A stretch of 64,000 bases of DNA from positions 62,001-126,000 of the IMG/VR virus record IMGVR_UViG_3300043786_000977, one strand, 5' to 3'. The notes beneath the pieces are model-generated. The model was not told the origin of the DNA. It did no database searches and saw only the letters and a program-made list of their open reading frames with translations. Made by a program: the position numbers and the translations under genes. Below, piece after piece: positions 4,678-63,058 of the stretch. Within the stretch, counting starts at the first letter, position 1, and every line of letters starts with the position of its first letter.

Positions 4678-6507
4678 CTATACCTGGAGTGCTGACAGAA
4701 CGTCTGCTGGATCGATCTCAACGATAGCCGGCGCACCACCAGATACCATACCACCGCCAAAGGCTGCTGTAGGAATCAGGTCCACCATGGTCGAGTTGAT
4801 TAACCGCATGGCGAGGATACAGGCATAGTCTAAGGCCATACAGAAGTCATCCGGCCGGTTGGGATTACGCATGAAGACACGGTGGGTCAATCCACCGACT
4901 TCAGACACTTCTTCGTACGGCGACAACAAGTCATCCGTGTATATCTTGAACTCGCTTTGGGGTGGGAAAAAGATACGACCGTACTTGATGGCCAGGAACA
5001 GGACCTCGAGCGCTGTTGTTTTATCTACTGTCCATCGGTGCTGACCCAGGGTGGGGCTGTATGAAAATAGCCGGTTCTGACGGACGTACATGATCTGAAC
5101 GACGACGATGCCGAAACGTTGTTCAAGCATTACGTTCTTGTCGAAGCCCATCCCGTAGTCCGCGGCCATCATAGCGCACTTGTAGAACTTGTGTGCCTTG
5201 GCGATTTCAGTAAGTGTTTCGTCAGGGTTAAACCCGATGAAGCGCCGCGCCCATAGGACGTCGACCTTTCCATCACCGCGTACCCCCACGATCGTATGCA
5301 CTGTGAAGGATTGTTGCTCGGCACCGCCCCAGTCAACACCGCTCACGGTAACGACGTAGCGTTTAAGCTGTTCTTGTAGTGTCCCGATAGACGGGAGTGT
5401 GGACTGTCTGTCGATATCTTTCTGGGTAATGATCCGGGCACCCAAGCTATGCGAAATACCCAGCACTTCCTGCATGATGATTGACAAGGGCAGACGCAAG
5501 ACTTTCCGCACGATTTTCTGCCAGTTGTTCGGGTCTTCAACAATGGCCGGTACTACGATCTGCGGGATGTGGTATCCGCGGAACTCGTTCATCCGGTCAG
5601 GGAACGCAGGTACCCATTCCCCAGCGCGTACATTCAAACGGGCATCACAGTAGACACAGTGGATGCCGTCGGCCTGAATCATCTCCAGGGCCTTACCCTC
5701 TTCCGTCGGAAAGTTCCAGGCGGTACAACTCTCGCAACGCATGGCCCATTCACATTGGGCTGACTGCTGCCAGAGTGATTCGATCGTGTTATCTGCCGTC
5801 TTGGCAGTACCCGTGAAACGACGTACACCCCACTTGGAAGCCGTCAAGGATTCCGAGATAATGGGGATGTTATCAACGAGCTGATCTTGTATCTCGTCAA
5901 AATCGATCCGGTCTGCATAAATACCGCGGGCACGATCTGACGATGTTTTTGCATAGGTGAGCTGGATACCGCTGCCGTGGGCGAACGCCTGGTGGTGCAC
6001 GGATTGAATGATCCGTGAGTCAGATAATACGCCTTCCGCTTCCTTCGATTGAAGCTGGCGTGCAAGTTCGCACGAATTAATAGCTTCATCTAAGTAGAGA
6101 ACCGAATAACGTTGAGTCTGTTGTTGTAACGGAGCTACGTACAACAACTGCAACTGTGGAACAGAAATTAAATCAAGTATCTCCGACCGACTGAGGTTCA
6201 GTGACTTTCCTATCTGCCGGCCACACATGAATATCGTGTCCGGAACATAAACATTATCATACATCGGTCGGAACTGTGGATGGTTGTCCAGTGAATACGG
6301 CTTGCCCCTGAGCTTGAATAGCAGGGGAAGTAACTCGGAACGATGGACCTTACGCGCAGCCTGCGCTACGTCCTCTCGTTCTGAATACGCTCTGATACTA
6401 GCTAAATCAGAGAGGGACAACGATGTTTCAGTTATATCAGCTGTGGCGGCGCTCGCTTGCGTCGACCCATGCTGCTGTGTTAGACTATTCTTCGCAGTTG
6501 AATTCAT
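4678..6507 (-). CDS. terL: Terminase large subunit (GpA-like ATPase plus nuclease)
   Basis: Walker A CGRQIGKS, Walker B IDFDEIQD, FTGT coupling motif, CxxC pairs, nuclease GVDWG and PDDFCMA; start placed at ATG 6507 because a promoter covers the longer ORF start. Confidence 0.9.
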   Translation of the reverse strand: MNSTAKNSLTQQHGSTQASAATADITETSLSLSDLASIRAYSEREDVAQAARKVHRSELLPLLFKLRGKPYSLDNHPQFRPMYDNVYVPDTIFMCGRQIGKSLNLSRSEILDLISVPQLQLLYVAPLQQQTQRYSVLYLDEAINSCELARQLQSKEAEGVLSDSRIIQSVHHQAFAHGSGIQLTYAKTSSDRARGIYADRIDFDEIQDQLVDNIPIISESLTASKWGVRRFTGTAKTADNTIESLWQQSAQCEWAMRCESCTAWNFPTEEGKALEMIQADGIHCVYCDARLNVRAGEWVPAFPDRMNEFRGYHIPQIVVPAIVEDPNNWQKIVRKVLRLPLSIIMQEVLGISHSLGARIITQKDIDRQSTLPSIGTLQEQLKRYVVTVSGVDWGGAEQQSFTVHTIVGVRGDGKVDVLWARRFIGFNPDETLTEIAKAHKFYKCAMMAADYGMGFDKNVMLEQRFGIVVVQIMYVRQNRLFSYSPTLGQHRWTVDKTTALEVLFLAIKYGRIFFPPQSEFKIYTDDLLSPYEEVSEVGGLTHRVFMRNPNRPDDFCMALDYACILAMRLINSTMVDLIPTAAFGGGMVSGGAPAIVEIDPADVLSALQV

Positions 6508-6517
6508 ATCGGAATAC

Positions 6518-6546
6518 ACAATACGAGATTGTGGTGCCGATGTCAA
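6518..6546 (-). promoter_or_regulatory. sigma70 promoter for terminase
   Basis: TTGACA-N17-TATTGT on the minus strand, ending 10 nt before ATG 6507. Confidence 0.75.
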
Positions 6547-6564
6547 CACACAAGCGGAGGATAG

Positions 6565-14095: not shown

Positions 14096-16279
14096 ATGAT
14101 ACTCAAAAGATTGAAACTCAGGAACTATCGTCAACACGCGGACCTCGACATCAAACTCGAAGGGACGATAATAGCGGTAGTCGGATCCAACGGTTCAGGT
14201 AAAAGTAACCTGCTTGGAGCTATTCAGTATGCATTTACTGGAGAGCAAACCGGATTCAAGAAAGCCGAACTCTTACGTTGGGGTACCAGCGAGGGTGAGG
14301 TAGTCGTCGAATTCGACCACAATGGCACTGTTGGTGAGATCAGCAGGTCCATTCATAGCTCCAGTGCATATCTGCGCTACGGAACCGAAACGTTTCGTGG
14401 TTCCGCAGCTGTGACAGATGCGCTACGTCTGCATCTCGACCTGGATAAGGATCTGATGAAGCAGGCGGTATTCGTACGCCAAGCAGAGATCGATGCAATC
14501 CTATTCACGGATCCTCGGGCACGTGAACTGGCTTTCCAGCGGTTAATGGGTATAGGCGATGCGAACAAGATCCACAAGGTCTTGGGTGACGTCATAGCCG
14601 AGATGGGTGATCCGACTAACTATGACGAGCAAATCACGGACGGTAAACGGCGCTATACCGAGATGCATGCACGGCTTCAAGGGCTGCAGGCAGAGGTACA
14701 GGCGATGACAGCCAAACGGTCAGAGATACCCGGTCTGGATGTCATCAAGGCGCAGATTACACGATTCGCAGTACACGCTGATGCTGTGTTGAAGTTTACA
14801 CAGGCTCGTCAACAGTTAACGGTGCAGGATCAGGCCGTAGCAGCAACGAAACTGCAGTTGGATGCCTTACCGCCTATCACGGGAGATATCGCGACGTATG
14901 ACCATCAGATTGCTGCGTTACAGCAGCGGTGGGCGGCGGCATTACGGTATCAGGAAGCACACGCAGCCTGGCAGAAGGCTGGTGAGGCCGTACTGGCACT
15001 GGGGACTCAACCCGTGGCACCGGAACAACTGCAGCAGGCCAAGGCTGCATATGATCAGGTAACCGCAGAAATCAACAGAATCCTGGGTAGGCATAAGCTA
15101 CACAAGGATCTGTTGACTGCGTTGGGTGCAGCACAGGCGTGTGCCGAGTGTCCAGTCTGCGGCAGTCCAATTACCGACATCAAACAACTACAGAACCGCC
15201 TAACAACGATCCTGCAAACGATTGAAGGTGAAGGTAAGACGTTACGGGATACACAACAACAGGCGGGAACGACAAAGGCACAGATGGAGCGGGCGGACGC
15301 TACGTTCCAGCAACAGTATGCCCAGCTGAGTGGGCAGCTCGCACAGGCAACGCAGTATCTGCAGCGGCAGACGGTTACAACCGATGACATGCAGGCATTA
15401 CAGGCGGAGCTCGCAAGACTGACAGCAGCTCGTCAGGCACTGATCAATCTGATCACTACACGCACCTCTGCTGAGACCGCCTATCAACAGCGTATGCTCG
15501 CATGTAAGGATTACGAGCAACGGTTACGCAGTGCTTACGAGAACGCGACGACCGTCGGTGTCACAGAACAAATGTTGGCTGAGGATGCTCAGACAGTCGT
15601 TCAGGGACTACGTACAGCGAGTGCTTCGTGGGAACAAGCGCAATCAGTACTTCAGGGGCTGGATACAGATTTGGCACGTTTAGATGGTACGGTAAAAGAG
15701 TTATCCGGAACATTGGCCACACTCGATAAGACCATCGCTGGTCTTGAATACAAACGGTCGACACAGCAAGTTCATCGCGATGTTGTGGCAACAATGACCC
15801 GAGTCCGGGATTGGTTCCATTACGGTAACGGCCCACATACTCTGTCATCCAGTGTATTGGGCGCAATGAACCAGGACGTGAATAAGTTCCTGGGACAGTT
15901 TACGGCACCGTTTACGGTAGAACCGTCCAGTGACTCTCTGGGTTTCCGTTGTCACTTCACGGATGGCCGTATGCTGCCTCCTGATGGTGCCCCGGATGCC
16001 ACTATGCTGTCCGGCGGTCAGAAGATACAGTTAGCAATTGCATTCCGCTTTGCGGCTTATTGTATGTTTGCGTCGAAACTGGGCTTGCTCAGTCTTGACG
16101 AACCCACAGTGTATCTGGATTCTAATAACGTGGGTCGGTTTTGTGATCTGCTTCAACAGATCAAGCGCGTCGCGCAAGGTATGAACCTACAGGTGCTTAT
16201 TGCCACGCATGAACGTGGTGTAATACCATTCGTAGATACAGTGATTGATCTATCAAACAACGATACAGTTAACAAGTAA
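14096..16279 (+). CDS. sbcC: Rad50/SbcC ATPase
   Basis: GSNGSGKS, coiled coil with CPVC zinc hook, LSGG, LSLDEPT, ATH. Confidence 0.95.
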   Translation: MILKRLKLRNYRQHADLDIKLEGTIIAVVGSNGSGKSNLLGAIQYAFTGEQTGFKKAELLRWGTSEGEVVVEFDHNGTVGEISRSIHSSSAYLRYGTETFRGSAAVTDALRLHLDLDKDLMKQAVFVRQAEIDAILFTDPRARELAFQRLMGIGDANKIHKVLGDVIAEMGDPTNYDEQITDGKRRYTEMHARLQGLQAEVQAMTAKRSEIPGLDVIKAQITRFAVHADAVLKFTQARQQLTVQDQAVAATKLQLDALPPITGDIATYDHQIAALQQRWAAALRYQEAHAAWQKAGEAVLALGTQPVAPEQLQQAKAAYDQVTAEINRILGRHKLHKDLLTALGAAQACAECPVCGSPITDIKQLQNRLTTILQTIEGEGKTLRDTQQQAGTTKAQMERADATFQQQYAQLSGQLAQATQYLQRQTVTTDDMQALQAELARLTAARQALINLITTRTSAETAYQQRMLACKDYEQRLRSAYENATTVGVTEQMLAEDAQTVVQGLRTASASWEQAQSVLQGLDTDLARLDGTVKELSGTLATLDKTIAGLEYKRSTQQVHRDVVATMTRVRDWFHYGNGPHTLSSSVLGAMNQDVNKFLGQFTAPFTVEPSSDSLGFRCHFTDGRMLPPDGAPDATMLSGGQKIQLAIAFRFAAYCMFASKLGLLSLDEPTVYLDSNNVGRFCDLLQQIKRVAQGMNLQVLIATHERGVIPFVDTVIDLSNNDTVNK

Positions 16280-58420: not shown

Positions 58421-59467
58421 ATGGCAAGTATAATGAATGAAGCATTGTCGGAAGCTCTCCAAATCGCTGCGGCTGAAGGTCGGAAACTCCGCCTCCCGCC
58501 AGCAGTCAAGGTGGTCGAACGCCCACCAGAAGAAGATCACCGCCTGGTCCTCGCCATGGTGCGCACGCACCGCAAGGCCCACTTACGCGGCCAGATGACC
58601 ATCAGTGCCCGGGAACGGGTATCAGGTGACATTATCCTCGGGCCGTACAGCAATCGGCGGGAGACCCCGACGGAAGAGGGGCTGGACCTGCTTATGCAGG
58701 CGCACCGCTGGGTACTCAATCCCATTCACATGGGTGACGGTAACCGGCGCCCCCTGTACACGATTGTCGGGCCGCCAACCATCACTTTGATGCATCGTAT
58801 CGAGACGCATTGCGATGAGACCGGCTGCGGGAACACGGACCGGGAGTGGAAAGACATCGTCATCATGCGTTCGAGGGATGAGTCAAATCCTCATGAACGT
58901 GTCAATGGCTGGTCACCTGACCTGTATACGCCCTGCAAAAAGTGTGGAAGGCCCGTAAGCCAGCGGAAACTGTGGTGCACGGCGATTCGTAGCCGGCCGG
59001 ACAGTCAGGACGATCCCGTCGTTTTAGAGAAGGATGCGGCGGCCGTCACACGCACATTCCTGGAAGCCTGGAAGCAAGGGCCTCCAGCAGATGGTCAGCC
59101 CACCCTAGGCCTACCTCGGATCTGGGCTGTGTATCGTAAGGACGATGTGCCTGATCAGAGCTGGCAACCATCGGACGCACGGGCGGCCGCTTTGGTTGAG
59201 AAGGCTGCCACGTTCCAGAAGAAGATCGAAAACGGTGGCGTGGTGTCGTATCAGTCATACCCACTCGGTATACTGCCGTATGCTGTCGCCAAACAGTTCC
59301 ATCAAGCGCCCGAGCCTCAATCGAAAGAGATTCGGGAGTGGTGGCTGGAAAACGATACGGCAAGCATCGGATGGGTTCGGCGCTCTGACCTCTTCCCGAA
59401 CGAGAACATGGGATGGCGCCGGCGTCTCTGGCACGACAACAGACAGACGACCGAACTGTTAGTCTGA
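58421..59467 (+). CDS. Hypothetical protein with Zn ribbon
   Basis: AAGGAG RBS; CDETGC...CKKC. Confidence 0.65.
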   Translation: MASIMNEALSEALQIAAAEGRKLRLPPAVKVVERPPEEDHRLVLAMVRTHRKAHLRGQMTISARERVSGDIILGPYSNRRETPTEEGLDLLMQAHRWVLNPIHMGDGNRRPLYTIVGPPTITLMHRIETHCDETGCGNTDREWKDIVIMRSRDESNPHERVNGWSPDLYTPCKKCGRPVSQRKLWCTAIRSRPDSQDDPVVLEKDAAAVTRTFLEAWKQGPPADGQPTLGLPRIWAVYRKDDVPDQSWQPSDARAAALVEKAATFQKKIENGGVVSYQSYPLGILPYAVAKQFHQAPEPQSKEIREWWLENDTASIGWVRRSDLFPNENMGWRRRLWHDNRQTTELLV

Positions 59468-59477
59468 CACCAGCAGC

Positions 59478-59723
59478 GTGGTGTAAAAAAATAGCGTTTG
59501 CACTATTTCACCTTCACTAGGACGGTGGTGTAAAAAATTAGTGCAAACGCTATTTCACCTAGACCATGCCCGTGGTATAGGTAAAATAGGTACATGAGGT
59601 AGTACGGGCTGTCTCAGTATGCTGAAAAGACTAGAAGTGTGGTGTTAAAAATTAGTCATAGGTACGGGTGCTGTAGTCGTAATAGGCTGTGGTTACAACG
59701 ATTTATACTAATTTTCAACACTA
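59478..59723. repeat. Direct/inverted repeat cluster (possible origin or operator region)
   Basis: 35-bp units at 59478 and 59525; third partial copy at 59639; inverted copy at 59707. Confidence 0.8.
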
Positions 59724-59752
59724 ACACCATGGTCATAGTGTGCTTGAGCTAA

Positions 59753-60067
59753 GTGACTACCGAGGTGGATTCTGTGAGTAGACCTAAGAAAACGAAAGTG
59801 ATAGGATTTGGTAGATTCCTTAAGGACAAACGTATTCACTGTGGTATGTCACAATACGCTATAGCAGCATCTTTGGGTGTTACTGTACGTAGTGTAAGAT
59901 ACTGGGAATACGACAGTAAGGTACCTTCTGTAGAACATAGACAACGTCTAGAAGAGTTTCTACAGTTTACCTTACCTGACTCTATTCAAGCTACTAGGTT
60001 ACTACGTGGCTTGCCTGTACAATCTCAACCCTTTTTCACAGACCTAAACCAGGAGGAAGACGGATGA
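59753..60067 (+). CDS. XRE-family HTH regulator
   Basis: FG.FLKDKR...GMSQ..IA..LGVT..SV..WE....VP. Confidence 0.85.
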   Translation: MTTEVDSVSRPKKTKVIGFGRFLKDKRIHCGMSQYAIAASLGVTVRSVRYWEYDSKVPSVEHRQRLEEFLQFTLPDSIQATRLLRGLPVQSQPFFTDLNQEEDG

Positions 60068-60858
60068 GTATGCTGCCTAAAGTTGAATGTCCCGAGTGTC
60101 ACGGACTGTTCGATCCCAGGGGTCTCGGACCTCACATGAAGAAGCACGGCATCACTGCCAGTGTCACTGTAACACGAGCCGGCTGGTCGGATGATCAGCT
60201 GAACAGTATCGCAACTGAATTCGTGTTGCTGCGTATGGATCAACCGTTGGCTGACGCCCACGAGTTGTTACAGACGGCCGTGAACAAAGCACTACCTCCG
60301 GCAGAGGTACGGCCGGTGCGTATGACGTCTGGGTTGATCGACGCGGTCACTAAGGCGTGGCAGACGCTTAACGATAACACGGTCGAGGTACCGATTGTCG
60401 TCGAGCGCCAGGTACCGCCCCCGCCCTTCAACTACCGAGTCGAGTTGAGCAAGATTCCCTTTGAGGATTTGCTGCAGGTGTTTGGGGCCCGCATGGGCGC
60501 CATCATCGATCACATGGGTACGTCGAGAGCGGTCATCGAATCTTATGCGAAACCGAAGGTTGTTGAACCGACGCGGCCACGCAAGCCGCGGGTTGCGATC
60601 ATCGGTTTGTTGTCTGATCAACAACAGGCTATCAGCGCGTCTGCTGAGGCTGGCGATTTCGATCTGCGCTTCATCAACAAGGAGCGTGCCAACCAGTCTA
60701 TCAATTCGGCCGTAGATTGGATTGTCGTGCAGAAACACACTGCACACGGATGGTGGAACAGCGCCCGCGACAAGATCGGAGCTGACCGCGTACTATTCGC
60801 GGCCGGCGGTATCTCGTCGGTGTTGGAGTGTCTGCGTAATGTGAAGAGCCGTGCATAA
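60064..60858 (+). CDS. Protein with N-terminal C2H2 finger and C-terminal DUF2325-like domain
   Basis: CPEC......GLGPHMKKH; VAIIGLL...AH...GGISS. Confidence 0.65.
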   Translation: MSMLPKVECPECHGLFDPRGLGPHMKKHGITASVTVTRAGWSDDQLNSIATEFVLLRMDQPLADAHELLQTAVNKALPPAEVRPVRMTSGLIDAVTKAWQTLNDNTVEVPIVVERQVPPPPFNYRVELSKIPFEDLLQVFGARMGAIIDHMGTSRAVIESYAKPKVVEPTRPRKPRVAIIGLLSDQQQAISASAEAGDFDLRFINKERANQSINSAVDWIVVQKHTAHGWWNSARDKIGADRVLFAAGGISSVLECLRNVKSRA

Positions 60859-61724: not shown

Positions 61725-62012
61725 ATGTCTGCAGAGGCGATAGCGAACAGTATACTTGCTGGTAGATTTACGGATCAACTGGCCGCCGTTGAGGCCGTGT
61801 TGATGTATTTCTACAACGTAGACCCTGTAGCTCAGATCAAAGGGTTATTCGACAATCCTGCACCGTCGTATATCGCCCAGTGGTCCCATCTCTACCGACA
61901 GGGTTTGACTGAGTGGTGGGGTCATCTTGACGTGGAACACAAACGTGCCTACGTCAGCGCGGCCCTAGATCGTTATGGTGCAGAAGCATACAAGCGCATA
62001 GGTGTTGCATGA
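61725..62012 (+). CDS. Hypothetical protein
   Basis: AAGGT RBS; ATGA overlap downstream. Confidence 0.6.
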   Translation: MSAEAIANSILAGRFTDQLAAVEAVLMYFYNVDPVAQIKGLFDNPAPSYIAQWSHLYRQGLTEWWGHLDVEHKRAYVSAALDRYGAEAYKRIGVA

Positions 62013-63058
62013 AGTTCTTATTTTCTGGGGCTAAAGAGCTACTCACGTCGGCCGTTGTGCCAGAAGACGTATTCGGTCCCGCCCTTGATGAAGTTGAGAG
62101 TGCTTACCGTGCACTAGCAATGGTCACACATCCGGATAAGCACAAAGGCTCTGCCAAGGCCGCGGATGCGTTCCAACTCCTACAGACTTGGAAAGCCAAA
62201 GCTGATACCAAGATAGCCAACGGTACCTACGGAGATCGTAACGCTCAAGCCGCGGTCACGATCACACACGGAAAGCACACCTACGTGGTGACTAACCGTA
62301 TCGACTCGGGTGACCTCGCTGAAGTGTACGGCGGCGTGGATGCTGCGAAGAAGCCCATCATCATCAAGGTTGTGCGTTCGCCTGCCAATAATGACCTGCT
62401 TGTCAATGAGGCCAAGGTGCTGGAGGACATTCATGAACAGGCTGAAACTGCCGAGTCTGTGCTTCTGGTGCATTTGCCTAAACTGGTATCCGCGTTCCAA
62501 CTCGTTGAGGGTGCGGCACGCCGTCAGGTGAATATCTTCGAGGTGATTCCGGACACCTGTACGCTGGCGGATGTCATCAAGGCCTATCCTGAGGGTATCG
62601 ATCCCCGTGACGTGGCGTGGATGTTCAACCGTATTCTAGGCGGTTTGGTCCTGACACACAAATGTGGCTACGTGCACGGCGCACTGACACCAGACCATAT
62701 ACTGATCGTACCCGAGACGCATAACGGTATACTGATCGATTGGAGCTACTCGGTGCCGGTCGGCGAGAAGATCAAGGCCATATCACCAAAGTGGAAAGGT
62801 TACTATCCTGCTGAAGTACTGACGGGACATCCGTCAACCTTTGGTGTGGATCTGTACATGGCGGCACGTTGTGCCTCTGCGCTACTCGGTACACAACCGC
62901 GTCCGCGCTTGTTAGCTGGTTTTCTACGTGCGTGTTTGTTGGGTCCGCGGCATAGACCGCAGAACGCCCACGAGACGTTCGTAGAATTCAGAGAGTTGTT
63001 GGCTACCCTGTTTGGTAAGCCGACGTTTCGTAGGTTCACATTATCAACAACAAAGTAG
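62009..63058 (+). CDS. J-domain plus protein-kinase-like (pseudokinase) fusion
   Basis: YRALA...HPDK...AFQ.L J-domain; GDLAEVY, IIKV, NE, HGALTPDHI, IDWS kinase fold. Confidence 0.85.
   Translation: MKFLFSGAKELLTSAVVPEDVFGPALDEVESAYRALAMVTHPDKHKGSAKAADAFQLLQTWKAKADTKIANGTYGDRNAQAAVTITHGKHTYVVTNRIDSGDLAEVYGGVDAAKKPIIIKVVRSPANNDLLVNEAKVLEDIHEQAETAESVLLVHLPKLVSAFQLVEGAARRQVNIFEVIPDTCTLADVIKAYPEGIDPRDVAWMFNRILGGLVLTHKCGYVHGALTPDHILIVPETHNGILIDWSYSVPVGEKIKAISPKWKGYYPAEVLTGHPSTFGVDLYMAARCASALLGTQPRPRLLAGFLRACLLGPRHRPQNAHETFVEFRELLATLFGKPTFRRFTLSTTK

What the first reader, a model, noticed from the sequence alone, without database searches (positions are those of the whole stretch)
59478..59559. 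Direct repeat whose 8-bp core is flipped between copies
Seen: unit 1 GTGGTGTAAAAAAATAG-CGTTTGCA-CTATTTCACC and unit 2 GTGGTGTAAAAAATTAG-TGCAAACG-CTATTTCACC, period 47. The arms are in direct orientation, but the cores are exact reverse complements, each flanked by short inverted arms. This also creates a perfect 17-bp inverted repeat between the units. Known: inverted arms around an asymmetric 8-bp spacer is the loxP/FRT layout, and flip-flop loops are typical of hairpin-based replication. Inference: recombination or resolution sites, a bidirectional origin element, or a fossil micro-inversion. No recombinase is seen in the window.
Basis: partly seen in the sequence, partly recalled or inferred. 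Interest (0 to 1): 0.6.

Follow-up and report, generated by a model that had tools for sequence, protein, structure and literature searches.

The report
Phage operator array with flipped linker
The flipped-core repeat is real and conserved, but it most likely belongs to the control region of a repressor-type gene in an uncultured freshwater jumbo phage, and the flip looks like an old, fixed replication slip rather than a recombination or hairpin-replication site.

Summary
In detail: two 35-bp units lie 47 bp apart, their 8-bp cores are exact reverse complements, and together they make a 17-bp perfect inverted repeat. That repeat is the longest local one in the 209-kb phage genome.

It is not an assembly artefact. 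Four independent assemblies are identical there, and two diverged lineages keep both units and both core orientations. The flip is therefore old and fixed, not an active switch.

The units sit in a 306-bp AT-rich spacer directly upstream of the genome's only Cro/CI-type (XRE) helix-turn-helix gene. The left arm of each unit is the right half of an 18-bp dyad site, ACACYA-N6-TRGTGT. Five of the ten such sites in the genome lie in this spacer, and the site recurs in the same spacer of every relative found.

A better parse is a row of ~40-bp composite palindromes, CTAWTT..ACACYA-N6-TRGTGT..AAWTAG.

The complete genome has no tyrosine or serine recombinase and no protelomerase.

- **Best reading:** an operator/promoter array for the regulator, with the linker flipped by template-switch spacer inversion.
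- **Rivals not excluded:** a replication origin, or an RNA hairpin.

Ordinary in kind and modest in interest.

The parts
59478..59512 (+).
   Evidence: Only one column varies among the three lineages (59491 A/T).
59525..59559 (+).
   Evidence: L016 has one transition in the linker (59547 A>G). L026 keeps the linker unchanged.
59495..59502 (.). Core/linker 1 (CGTTTGCA), between composite palindromes E1 and E2
   Evidence: Not enriched in the spacers of distant relatives.
59542..59549 (.). Core/linker 2 (TGCAAACG), between composite palindromes E2 and E3
59489..59555 (.). Long inverted repeat: 20-nt arms 59489-59508 and 59536-59555 with 27 nt between; the perfect run is 17 bp
   Evidence: longest perfect local inverted repeat in the genome. 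RNA fold -34.4 kcal/mol, z = -5.6. The arms are conserved and the loop is variable.
59467..59484 (.). O1: 18-bp dyad site ACACCA-N6-TGGTGT (0 mismatches); it overlaps the stop codon of the upstream gene
59514..59531 (.). O2: TCACTA-N6-TGGTGT. It is GCACCA..TGGTGT in L016 and ATACTA..TAGTGT in L026.
59561..59578 (.). O3: AGACCA-N6-TGGTAT, the centre of the third 47-bp unit
   Evidence: inverted repeat I2
59628..59645 (.). O4: AGACTA-N6-TGGTGT, followed by TAAAAATTAG
59724..59741 (.). O5: ACACCA-N6-TAGTGT, about 40 bp before the regulator's start codon
   Evidence: inverted repeats I3, I5, I8
59503..59541 (.). E2: 39-bp composite palindrome CTATTT-N5-O2-N4-AATTAG
   Evidence: CTAWTT-N27/28-AAWTAG occurs only here and at E3 in the whole genome.
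59550..59589 (.). E3: 40-bp composite palindrome CTATTT-CACCT-O3-AGGTA-AAATAG. The outer 11 nt are perfectly symmetric in L016 and L026.
   Evidence: (inverted repeat I2)
59642..59721 (.). Inverted repeat GTGTTAAAAATTAGT / ACTAATTTTCAACAC bracketing a 50-nt stretch that holds a conserved TATACT (59704-59709)
   Evidence: (inverted repeat I4)
59774..60067 (+). Cro/CI-type (XRE, HTH_3) regulator gene, 97 aa. GTG start after GAGGTGGA (59762-59769). It is the only HTH_3 gene in the genome.
   Evidence: (public gene calls give 97 aa)
58421..59467 (+). Upstream gene, 348 aa, no known family. It is syntenic with the spacer and the regulator in all relatives.
60064..60858 (+). Downstream gene, 264 aa. 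Its start overlaps the regulator's stop. The N-terminus has a C-x2-C-x11-H-x3-H motif. Function unknown.

Best explanation
The repeat is part of the cis-regulatory region (operators, probably with promoters) of the single Cro/CI-type helix-turn-helix regulator of an uncultured freshwater jumbo phage.

The working units are 18-bp dyad sites, ACACYA-N6-TRGTGT (O1-O5). Most are embedded in ~40-bp composite palindromes with outer arms CTAWTT / AAWTAG. Three of these palindromes abut at a 47-bp period.

Inferred, not shown: dimers of the regulator bind these sites and control transcription into its own operon, and perhaps read-through from the upstream operon.

Unit 2 arose as a tandem copy of unit 1. 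Its linker was then turned in place by an interstrand template switch between the 6-bp inverted arms AAATAG/CTATTT (IR-spacer or loop inversion).

A symmetric dimer reading AAWTAG-N8-CTATTT cannot tell the two orientations apart, so the flip would be functionally silent and could become fixed. A by-product is a 17-20-bp inverted repeat that would fold as a hairpin in any transcript that crosses it.
For: **Link to the regulator**
- The array lies in the 306-bp spacer directly upstream of the only HTH_3 gene in the 209-kb genome.
- A profile of that gene's orthologs matches the P22 C2, 434 and phage immunity repressors.

**Clustering of the sites**
- 5 of the 10 genome hits to ACACCA-N6-TGGTGT at 2 mismatches or fewer fall in this spacer. 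Shuffled genomes give 5-13 hits in all.
- 7 of the 75 AAWTAG/CTAWTT hexamers in the genome fall here. The composite geometry occurs only here.

**Conservation in relatives**
- The order 348-aa gene, spacer, regulator gene is kept in all relatives.
- Every relative's spacer carries the same dyad site, perfect in L016, L018 (two copies), L024 (two copies) and L029. This holds although the regulators are only 30-38% identical to the window's.
- The spacer is 91.5% identical to L016 without indels, against 76-80% for the genes upstream of it.
The N6 spacers inside the dyads vary at 13 of 30 (p = 0.001), as expected for uncontacted operator centres.
- The composite palindrome keeps 38-40 bp in L018 and L029, while the linkers range from 8 to about 70 nt.
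- The core motif is not enriched in distant relatives, so the core behaves as a linker.

**Promoter hints**
- Promoter-like hexamers bracket O1 and O3.

**Age and origin of the flip**
- The flip is fixed in three lineages and four assemblies.
- IR-spacer and loop inversion by template switching is documented, including 7-8-nt loops in bacteria (PMC8604942; PMC8794818).
Against: - No binding, promoter or transcript data exist. No RNA run holds the region.
- The promoter-like matches are weak: 2 found against 0.8 expected. One -10-like hexamer is lost in L016 and L026.
- The 47-bp period is 4.5 helical turns, an awkward phase for cooperative binding between neighbouring sites.
- The most conserved letters are the A-tract/TAG arms and the linkers, not the O2/O3 half-sites. 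A second factor or an RNA role may therefore be involved.
- No relative with an un-flipped unit 2 was found, so the direction and mechanism of the inversion are inferred.
- Dyad conservation with variable centres fits hairpins as well as protein sites.
Confidence: 0.55

Rival explanations
1. Replication origin, or a transcription-activated origin sharing the regulator's promoter region. The repeated dyad sites would act as iterons for an unrecognised initiator, next to AT-rich DNA that unwinds easily.
For: - The element is unique in the genome.
- The spacer has the lowest G+C (0.41) of the 22 long gaps.
- It holds the longest local inverted repeat in the genome.
- It has five dyad-symmetric repeats with A-tracts, which recalls the four dyad iterons of ori-lambda (own knowledge).
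- Both neighbouring proteins are of unknown function and carry conserved Cys/His motifs.
Against: - No initiator family was recognised in the flanking genes.
- The recognisable replication genes (SbcC-like, helicases, DnaB-like, PolA, UvsX-like) lie 27-45 kb away, at window 14-32 kb.
- Cumulative GC skew rises monotonically with no switch. This is weak evidence in a genome whose genes nearly all face one way.
- The adjacent gene is a Cro/CI-type regulator, which already accounts for the sites.
Confidence: 0.2
2. RNA-level element. The 20-bp helix formed by the two units in the plus-strand transcript would act as a terminator without a U-tract, a 3'-end stabiliser of the upstream operon, or an attenuator that competes with the E3 hairpin for CUAUUU (59550-59555). 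On this reading the flip was selected because it creates that helix.
For: - The folding is strong (-34.4 kcal/mol, z = -5.6).
- The arms are conserved (3 of 40 columns vary) and the loop is variable (9 of 27).
- The single change in a core (59547 A>G in L016) keeps a U-G pair on the plus strand.
- L017, L018 and L025 each have a stable hairpin of unrelated sequence at the matching place just after the upstream gene. In L017 it sits between the same AATTAG and CTATTT.
Against: - No terminator-like site was found and there is no U-tract.
- There is no Rfam match.
- There is no compensatory double change in the helix. The W position of AAWTAG varies freely and gives T-T mismatches.
- Any DNA palindrome gives a good fold z-score.
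- No transcript data exist.
Confidence: 0.15
3. Site-specific recombination or resolution sites of the loxP/FRT or protelomerase kind, or an active invertible or flip-flop element.
For: Short inverted arms flank an asymmetric 8-bp spacer, and the two spacers are in opposite orientation.
Against: - The arms abutting the spacer are only 6 bp.
- The sites are 47 bp apart, too close for synapsis by known recombinases (own knowledge).
- The genome, rated 100% complete by CheckV, has no Phage_integrase, Resolvase or ResT/TelK match, while the controls matched.
- The orientation is identical in four assemblies and two diverged lineages.
- A scan of 241 million metagenome records for the arms with any 8-bp core returned only the known forms.
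Confidence: 0.03

Closest known systems
Operator arrays of Cro/CI-type phage repressors (lambda OR1-3/OL1-3, P22 and 434 operators)
   Same: - Several 14-18-bp dyad sites are clustered in the spacer next to a Cro/C1-type HTH gene.
- The centres of the sites are variable.
- The sites overlap promoter-like hexamers.
- If the two kinds of palindrome here (inner dyads and AAWTAG-N8-CTATTT) are both counted, site centres are 23-24 bp apart, as in lambda OR (own knowledge).
   Different: - No integrase and no sign of lysogeny in a 209-kb phage.
- The sites are embedded in ~40-bp composite palindromes with conserved A-tract/TAG outer arms.
- Three units abut at a 47-bp period.
- There is no divergent repressor/cro gene pair.
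- Binding has not been tested.
Inverted-repeat spacer (hairpin loop) inversion by interstrand template switching (PMC8604942, PMC8794818); the same footprint is known as small inversions in plastid spacers (PMC2903610, title and abstract only)
   Same: The sequence between short inverted arms is replaced by its exact reverse complement while the arms stay put. Loops of 7-8 nt are documented in bacterial rRNA.
   Different: The evidence here comes from comparing two paralogous tandem copies, not orthologs. The arms are short (6 bp perfect). No un-flipped ancestor was found.
loxP / FRT recombination targets
   Same: An asymmetric 8-bp spacer lies between inverted arms.
   Different: The arms are 6 bp, not 13 bp. 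There is no recombinase in the genome. The sites are 47 bp apart. No recombination products were seen.
ori-lambda-type iteron origins
   Same: Repeated dyad-symmetric sites with A-tracts in an AT-rich, unique stretch.
   Different: The element is not inside or beside a recognisable initiator gene. The spacing is irregular beyond the first three units. There is no replication evidence.

Membership tests
Cro/CI (XRE)-type repressor operator array | A Cro/C1-type HTH regulator gene lies adjacent | tested here: met
   HTH_3, E = 3e-8, above the cut-off. It is the only such gene in the genome. The ortholog profile hits the P22 C2, 434 and immunity repressors.
Cro/CI (XRE)-type repressor operator array | Several copies of one dyad-symmetric 14-18-bp site are clustered there and rare elsewhere | tested here: met
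   5 of the 10 genome hits lie within 306 bp.
Cro/CI (XRE)-type repressor operator array | The site travels with orthologous regulators in relatives | tested here: met
   The same dyad is found in the homologous spacer of L016, L017, L018, L023, L024, L025 and L029. The regulators are orthologous.
Cro/CI (XRE)-type repressor operator array | The regulator binds the sites as a dimer and changes transcription | not testable with these tools
   No DNA-protein tool was available. The homodimer job gave no verdict and counts neither way.
Cro/CI (XRE)-type repressor operator array | The sites overlap a promoter | tested here: inconclusive
   Two sigma-70-like matches bracket O1 and O3, against 0.8 expected. 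The host and its promoter consensus are unknown.
loxP/FRT-type tyrosine-recombinase target | 11-13-bp inverted arms abut a 6-8-bp asymmetric spacer | tested here: not met
   Only AAATAG/CTATTT (6 bp) abut the core. GGTG..CACC pairs only across a 5-nt bulge.
loxP/FRT-type tyrosine-recombinase target | A cognate recombinase is encoded | tested here: not met
   No Phage_integrase or Resolvase match in the complete genome, while the controls matched.
loxP/FRT-type tyrosine-recombinase target | Both orientations or recombination products occur in populations | tested here: not met
   The orientation is the same in all assemblies and lineages, and no joints were seen. Only contigs could be laid, not raw reads.
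Protelomerase / hairpin-telomere flip-flop | A protelomerase gene and a terminal position, with two orientations in the population | tested here: not met
   No ResT/TelK match. The element is internal, at 121.5 kb of 208.9 kb, and monomorphic.
Iteron-type replication origin | Regularly spaced repeats beside an AT-rich unwinding stretch | tested here: inconclusive
   Three units at 47 bp plus two more sites. The spacer has G+C 0.41, the lowest of the long gaps.
Iteron-type replication origin | An adjacent initiator gene, or a strand-skew switch | tested here: not met
   The neighbouring genes match no initiator family. The skew is monotonic, which is weak evidence in a co-oriented genome.
Template-switch IR-spacer inversion | The spacer is an exact reverse complement while the flanking inverted arms are kept | tested here: met
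   CGTTTGCA against TGCAAACG between AAWTAG and CTATTT in both units.
Template-switch IR-spacer inversion | The un-inverted ancestral state is seen in an outgroup | tested here: inconclusive
   L016 and L026 already have the flip. More distant relatives have unrelated linkers.
Intrinsic terminator / known RNA family | A GC-rich stem followed by a U-tract, or an Rfam match | tested here: not met
   0 terminator-like sites. There are no Rfam matches near gathering scores.

The most novel reading that the evidence does not exclude
The flip was selected, not neutral. The two units would form a conserved 20-bp long-range helix, in RNA or as extruded DNA, that encloses operator O2 and competes with the E3 hairpin. 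That would give a structural switch coupling read-through from the upstream operon (or origin firing) to occupancy by the regulator. It would be a cis-acting device in which protein sites and nucleic-acid structure share the same letters, in a jumbo-phage lineage with no cultured member.
Probability: 0.12. Interest if true: 0.6.

Novelty: new member of a known kind. Interest (0 to 1): 0.27.

Why it matters
The analysis gives a defined set of candidate operators (ACACYA-N6-TRGTGT) and a candidate regulator. They belong to a lineage of freshwater jumbo phages that has no match in the phage DNA collection and no recognisable relative in the viral-contig scans. This is a ready starting point for binding and reporter experiments.

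It is also a clean natural example of an 8-bp inverted-repeat spacer inversion preserved between two tandem paralogous copies. It shows how such a mutation can create the longest hairpin-forming repeat in a genome in a single step. It does not point to a new recombination or replication mechanism.

Tried and rejected
**Searches for relatives**
- DNA searches of the phage collection, near and distant modes, gave no match.
- The left-arm 17-mer in viral contigs gave 15 single hits in unrelated contigs, about what chance would give; my rough estimate, not computed.
- The full unit with a free core gave 0 hits in viral contigs.
- Protein-guided scans of viral contigs with the flanking genes, and with a family profile, found no relative.

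**Flanking proteins**
- ESM Atlas look-alikes of both flanking proteins gave nothing usable.
- The AlphaFold model of the 264-aa protein had pLDDT 48, so it was not searched.
- The profile of the 348-aa family against PDB sequences gave 0 hits.

**Binding test**
- The homodimer job for the regulator gave no verdict. It is evidence neither way.

**Transcription machinery and motifs**
- No T7-type RNA polymerase and no sigma-70 region 2 were found. The control genomes did not match the T7-type polymerase family either, so that blank is uninformative.
- 8-mer enrichment over all spacers showed no recurrent promoter-like motif.

**Ideas dropped**
- The core as a conserved motif: 1 hit in the spacers of distant relatives against 1.15 expected, so the resemblance to L024 (AGCGTTTGC) is taken as chance.
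- Covariation at the Y/R position of the dyads: the combinations match what independent variation would give, so it does not separate a hairpin from a protein site (hand count).
- By eye, DnaA-box, IHF, parS and Bacteroidota-promoter readings of the arms all fitted poorly.
- A pac/cos site: the terminase gene is 53 kb away and nothing supports it.

**Reads**
- Only Logan contigs were available. There were no raw reads and no RNA runs.

Full report
**1. Observation**

- Unit 1 is 59478-59512: GTGGTGTAAAAAAATAG-CGTTTGCA-CTATTTCACC.
- Unit 2 is 59525-59559: GTGGTGTAAAAAATTAG-TGCAAACG-CTATTTCACC.
- The period is 47, and the 8-bp cores are exact reverse complements.

The repeat finder reports the 47-nt direct repeat and an inverted repeat with 20-nt arms, 59489-59508 and 59536-59555, of which 19 pairs are complementary. 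The perfect run is 17 bp.

A scan of the whole genome shows this is the longest perfect local inverted repeat in 208,908 bp. Only seven have arms of 12 bp or more.

The 17-nt left arm occurs three times, all in this spacer, against 0.21 expected, and nowhere else in the genome.

**2. Not an artefact, not a live switch**

The window is bases 62001-126000 of a single 208,908-bp contig. It has a 127-bp exact end overlap and is rated a complete virus record. It comes from freshwater lake metagenomes.

The whole spacer is letter-for-letter identical in four other assemblies:
- two independent ENA assemblies, L021 and L022;
- a JGI contig, L027;
- a Logan contig from a 2016 run of another study, X3.

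No joints or alternative orientations appeared. Only contigs could be laid, however, so rare variants cannot be ruled out.

Two diverged lineages keep both units with the same two core orientations. These are L016 and L026/L028, whose upstream proteins are 72% and 81% identical to the window's. The only changes in the repeat region among the three lineages are 59491 A/T, 59538 T/A and 59547 A>G. The flip is therefore old and fixed.

**3. Context**

Nearly all genes face the plus strand, and GC skew is positive throughout with no switch.

The repeat lies in a 306-bp spacer, 59468-59773. Its G+C is 0.41, the lowest of the 22 long gaps. Its neighbours are:
- upstream, a 348-aa gene of unknown family (58421-59467);
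- downstream, a 97-aa Cro/CI-type HTH_3 gene (59774-60067) with a GTG start after GAGGTGGA. Public gene calls agree on this start.

Family scans support the regulator assignment. It is the only HTH_3 match in the genome. A profile of its orthologs hits the P22 C2, 434 and phage immunity repressors.

The next gene (60064-60858, 264 aa) overlaps the regulator's stop codon and begins with a C-x2-C-x11-H-x3-H motif. Its function stayed open.

The recognisable replication genes lie at window 14-32 kb and the large terminase at 4678-6549 on the minus strand.

**4. Anatomy**

GTGGTGT is the right half of an 18-bp dyad, ACACCA-N6-TGGTGT. At 2 mismatches or fewer the genome has ten such sites, and five of them are in this spacer:
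- O1 at 59467
- O2 at 59514
- O3 at 59561
- O4 at 59628
- O5 at 59724

Shuffled genomes give 5-13 sites in total. O1-O3 show that there are three tandem 47-bp units, not two.

The hexamers AAWTAG and CTAWTT are also concentrated here: 7 of the 75 in the genome. The arrangement CTAWTT-N27/28-AAWTAG occurs only twice in the genome, at 59503-59541 and 59550-59589.

The better parse is therefore a row of ~40-bp composite palindromes, E = CTAWTT-N4/5-ACACYA-N6-TRGTGT-N4/5-AAWTAG.

A further pair, 59642-59656 and 59707-59721, brackets 50 nt that hold a conserved TATACT.

**5. Relatives**

A word search with the 348-aa protein found ten relatives. Their contigs all show the same order: 348-aa gene, spacer, HTH gene. 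The regulators are orthologous at 30-38% identity.

Every homologous spacer carries ACACYA-N6-TRGTGT. It is perfect in L016, L018 (two copies), L024 (two copies) and L029.

The composite palindrome keeps 38-40 bp in L018 and L029, while the linkers vary from 8 to about 70 nt. L017 has AATTAG, a 44-nt hairpin of unrelated sequence, then CTATTT at the matching place.

The core motif itself is not enriched in distant relatives: 1 hit against 1.15 expected.

The spacer is 91.5% identical to L016 with no indels. For comparison:
- the two genes upstream are 76-80% identical;
- the regulator gene is 95% identical;
- the gene after it is 86% identical.

Among the three lineages 59 of 306 columns vary:
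- the outer hexamers vary at 3 of 42;
- the N6 centres of the dyads vary at 13 of 30 (p = 0.001, more variable).

**6. How it most likely works**

Shown:
- a unique, conserved array of dyad sites sits next to the genome's only Cro/CI-type regulator;
- the site travels with the orthologous regulator across lineages;
- the flanks are conserved and the centres are free.

Inferred:
- dimers of the regulator bind O1-O5;
- O5, and perhaps O4, overlap the promoter of the regulator's own operon;
- O1-O3 sit between promoter-like hexamers and may gate read-through or tandem promoters.

The direct similarity of the two units includes the asymmetric inner spacers, AAAA on the left and CACCT on the right. 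This argues for a tandem duplication followed by inversion of the linker alone, rather than an inverted duplication.

Such IR-spacer or loop inversions by interstrand template switching are documented, including 7-8-nt loops in bacterial rRNA (PMC8604942; PMC8794818).

For a symmetric reader of AAWTAG-N8-CTATTT, the two orientations are the same site. That would make the flip silent. This last point is inference.

**7. Rivals**

- **Replication origin.** It remains possible because the element is unique, AT-rich, repeat-dense and holds the longest inverted repeat. It lacks any recognised initiator and any skew signal, and the regulator already accounts for the sites.
- **RNA hairpin.** This could be a terminator without a U-tract, a stabiliser or an attenuator. 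In its favour are strong folding, the conserved-arm and variable-loop pattern, one U-G-compatible change, and hairpins of unrelated sequence at the same place in L017, L018 and L025. Against it, there is no compensatory double change, no terminator-like site, no Rfam match and no RNA data.
- **Recombination, resolution or flip-flop.** This is rejected. The arms are 6 bp, the spacing is 47 bp, the complete genome has no integrase, resolvase or protelomerase, and every assembly is monomorphic.

**8. Verdict**

The element is a new member of a known kind: a phage repressor-type control region. It carries a neat but ordinary mutational footprint. Interest is modest, at 0.27.

The most novel reading still open is a selected structural switch formed by the two units (probability about 0.12).

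Noticed in passing
G000 ends (outside the window): first and last 127 bases: The ends overlap exactly for 127 bp. IMG/VR classes this as direct terminal repeats. It looks like the k-mer overlap of a circularly closed assembly rather than true phage ends. The physical ends of the genome are therefore unknown.
   Followed up: partly
window 14096-16279 (+), and genome-wide: The phage encodes an SbcC-like subunit of a palindrome-specific nuclease. The genome has only 7 perfect local inverted repeats with arms of 12 bp or more. The studied repeat is the outlier that survives.
   Followed up: partly
window 62009-63058 (+): A protein with a DnaJ domain followed by a protein-kinase domain. It is about 37% identical over 97% of its length to the Ser/Thr kinases of the Bxz1/Catera-like (cluster C, own knowledge) mycobacteriophages. 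This may hint at an actinobacterial host, which was not tested.
   Followed up: partly
window 60064-60858 (+): A 264-aa protein translationally coupled to the regulator. Its N-terminus has a C-x2-C-x11-H-x3-H (zinc-finger-like) motif, and the C-terminal third is predicted to alternate strands and helices. Only close homologs exist and the model confidence was too low to use.
   Followed up: partly
window 59443-59770, runs X5, X6, X7: All three low-depth runs have contigs on both flanks but none across the spacer. This could be chance at 2-3x depth, a record filter, or poor sequencing through the AT-rich hairpin. The tool warns that a hole proves nothing.
   Followed up: no
L017:6123-6320: In a relative, the homologous spacer holds a 40-nt inverted repeat (95% complementary) with 118 nt between the arms. 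It encloses two TTGACA motifs. Nested palindromes are a shared trait of this spacer family; L023 and L024 show them too.
   Followed up: partly
window 59753 vs 59774: The mechanical ORF list starts the regulator at GTG 59753 (104 aa). The GTG at 59774 follows a GAGGTGGA ribosome-binding site, and public gene calls use it (97 aa).
   Followed up: yes
window 58421-59467 (+) and relatives P0002-P0011: The 348-aa upstream protein family has four invariant cysteines (C131, C136, C172, C175) and many invariant Trp, Arg and Pro residues. It matches no Pfam, PHROG or PDB sequence.
   Followed up: partly
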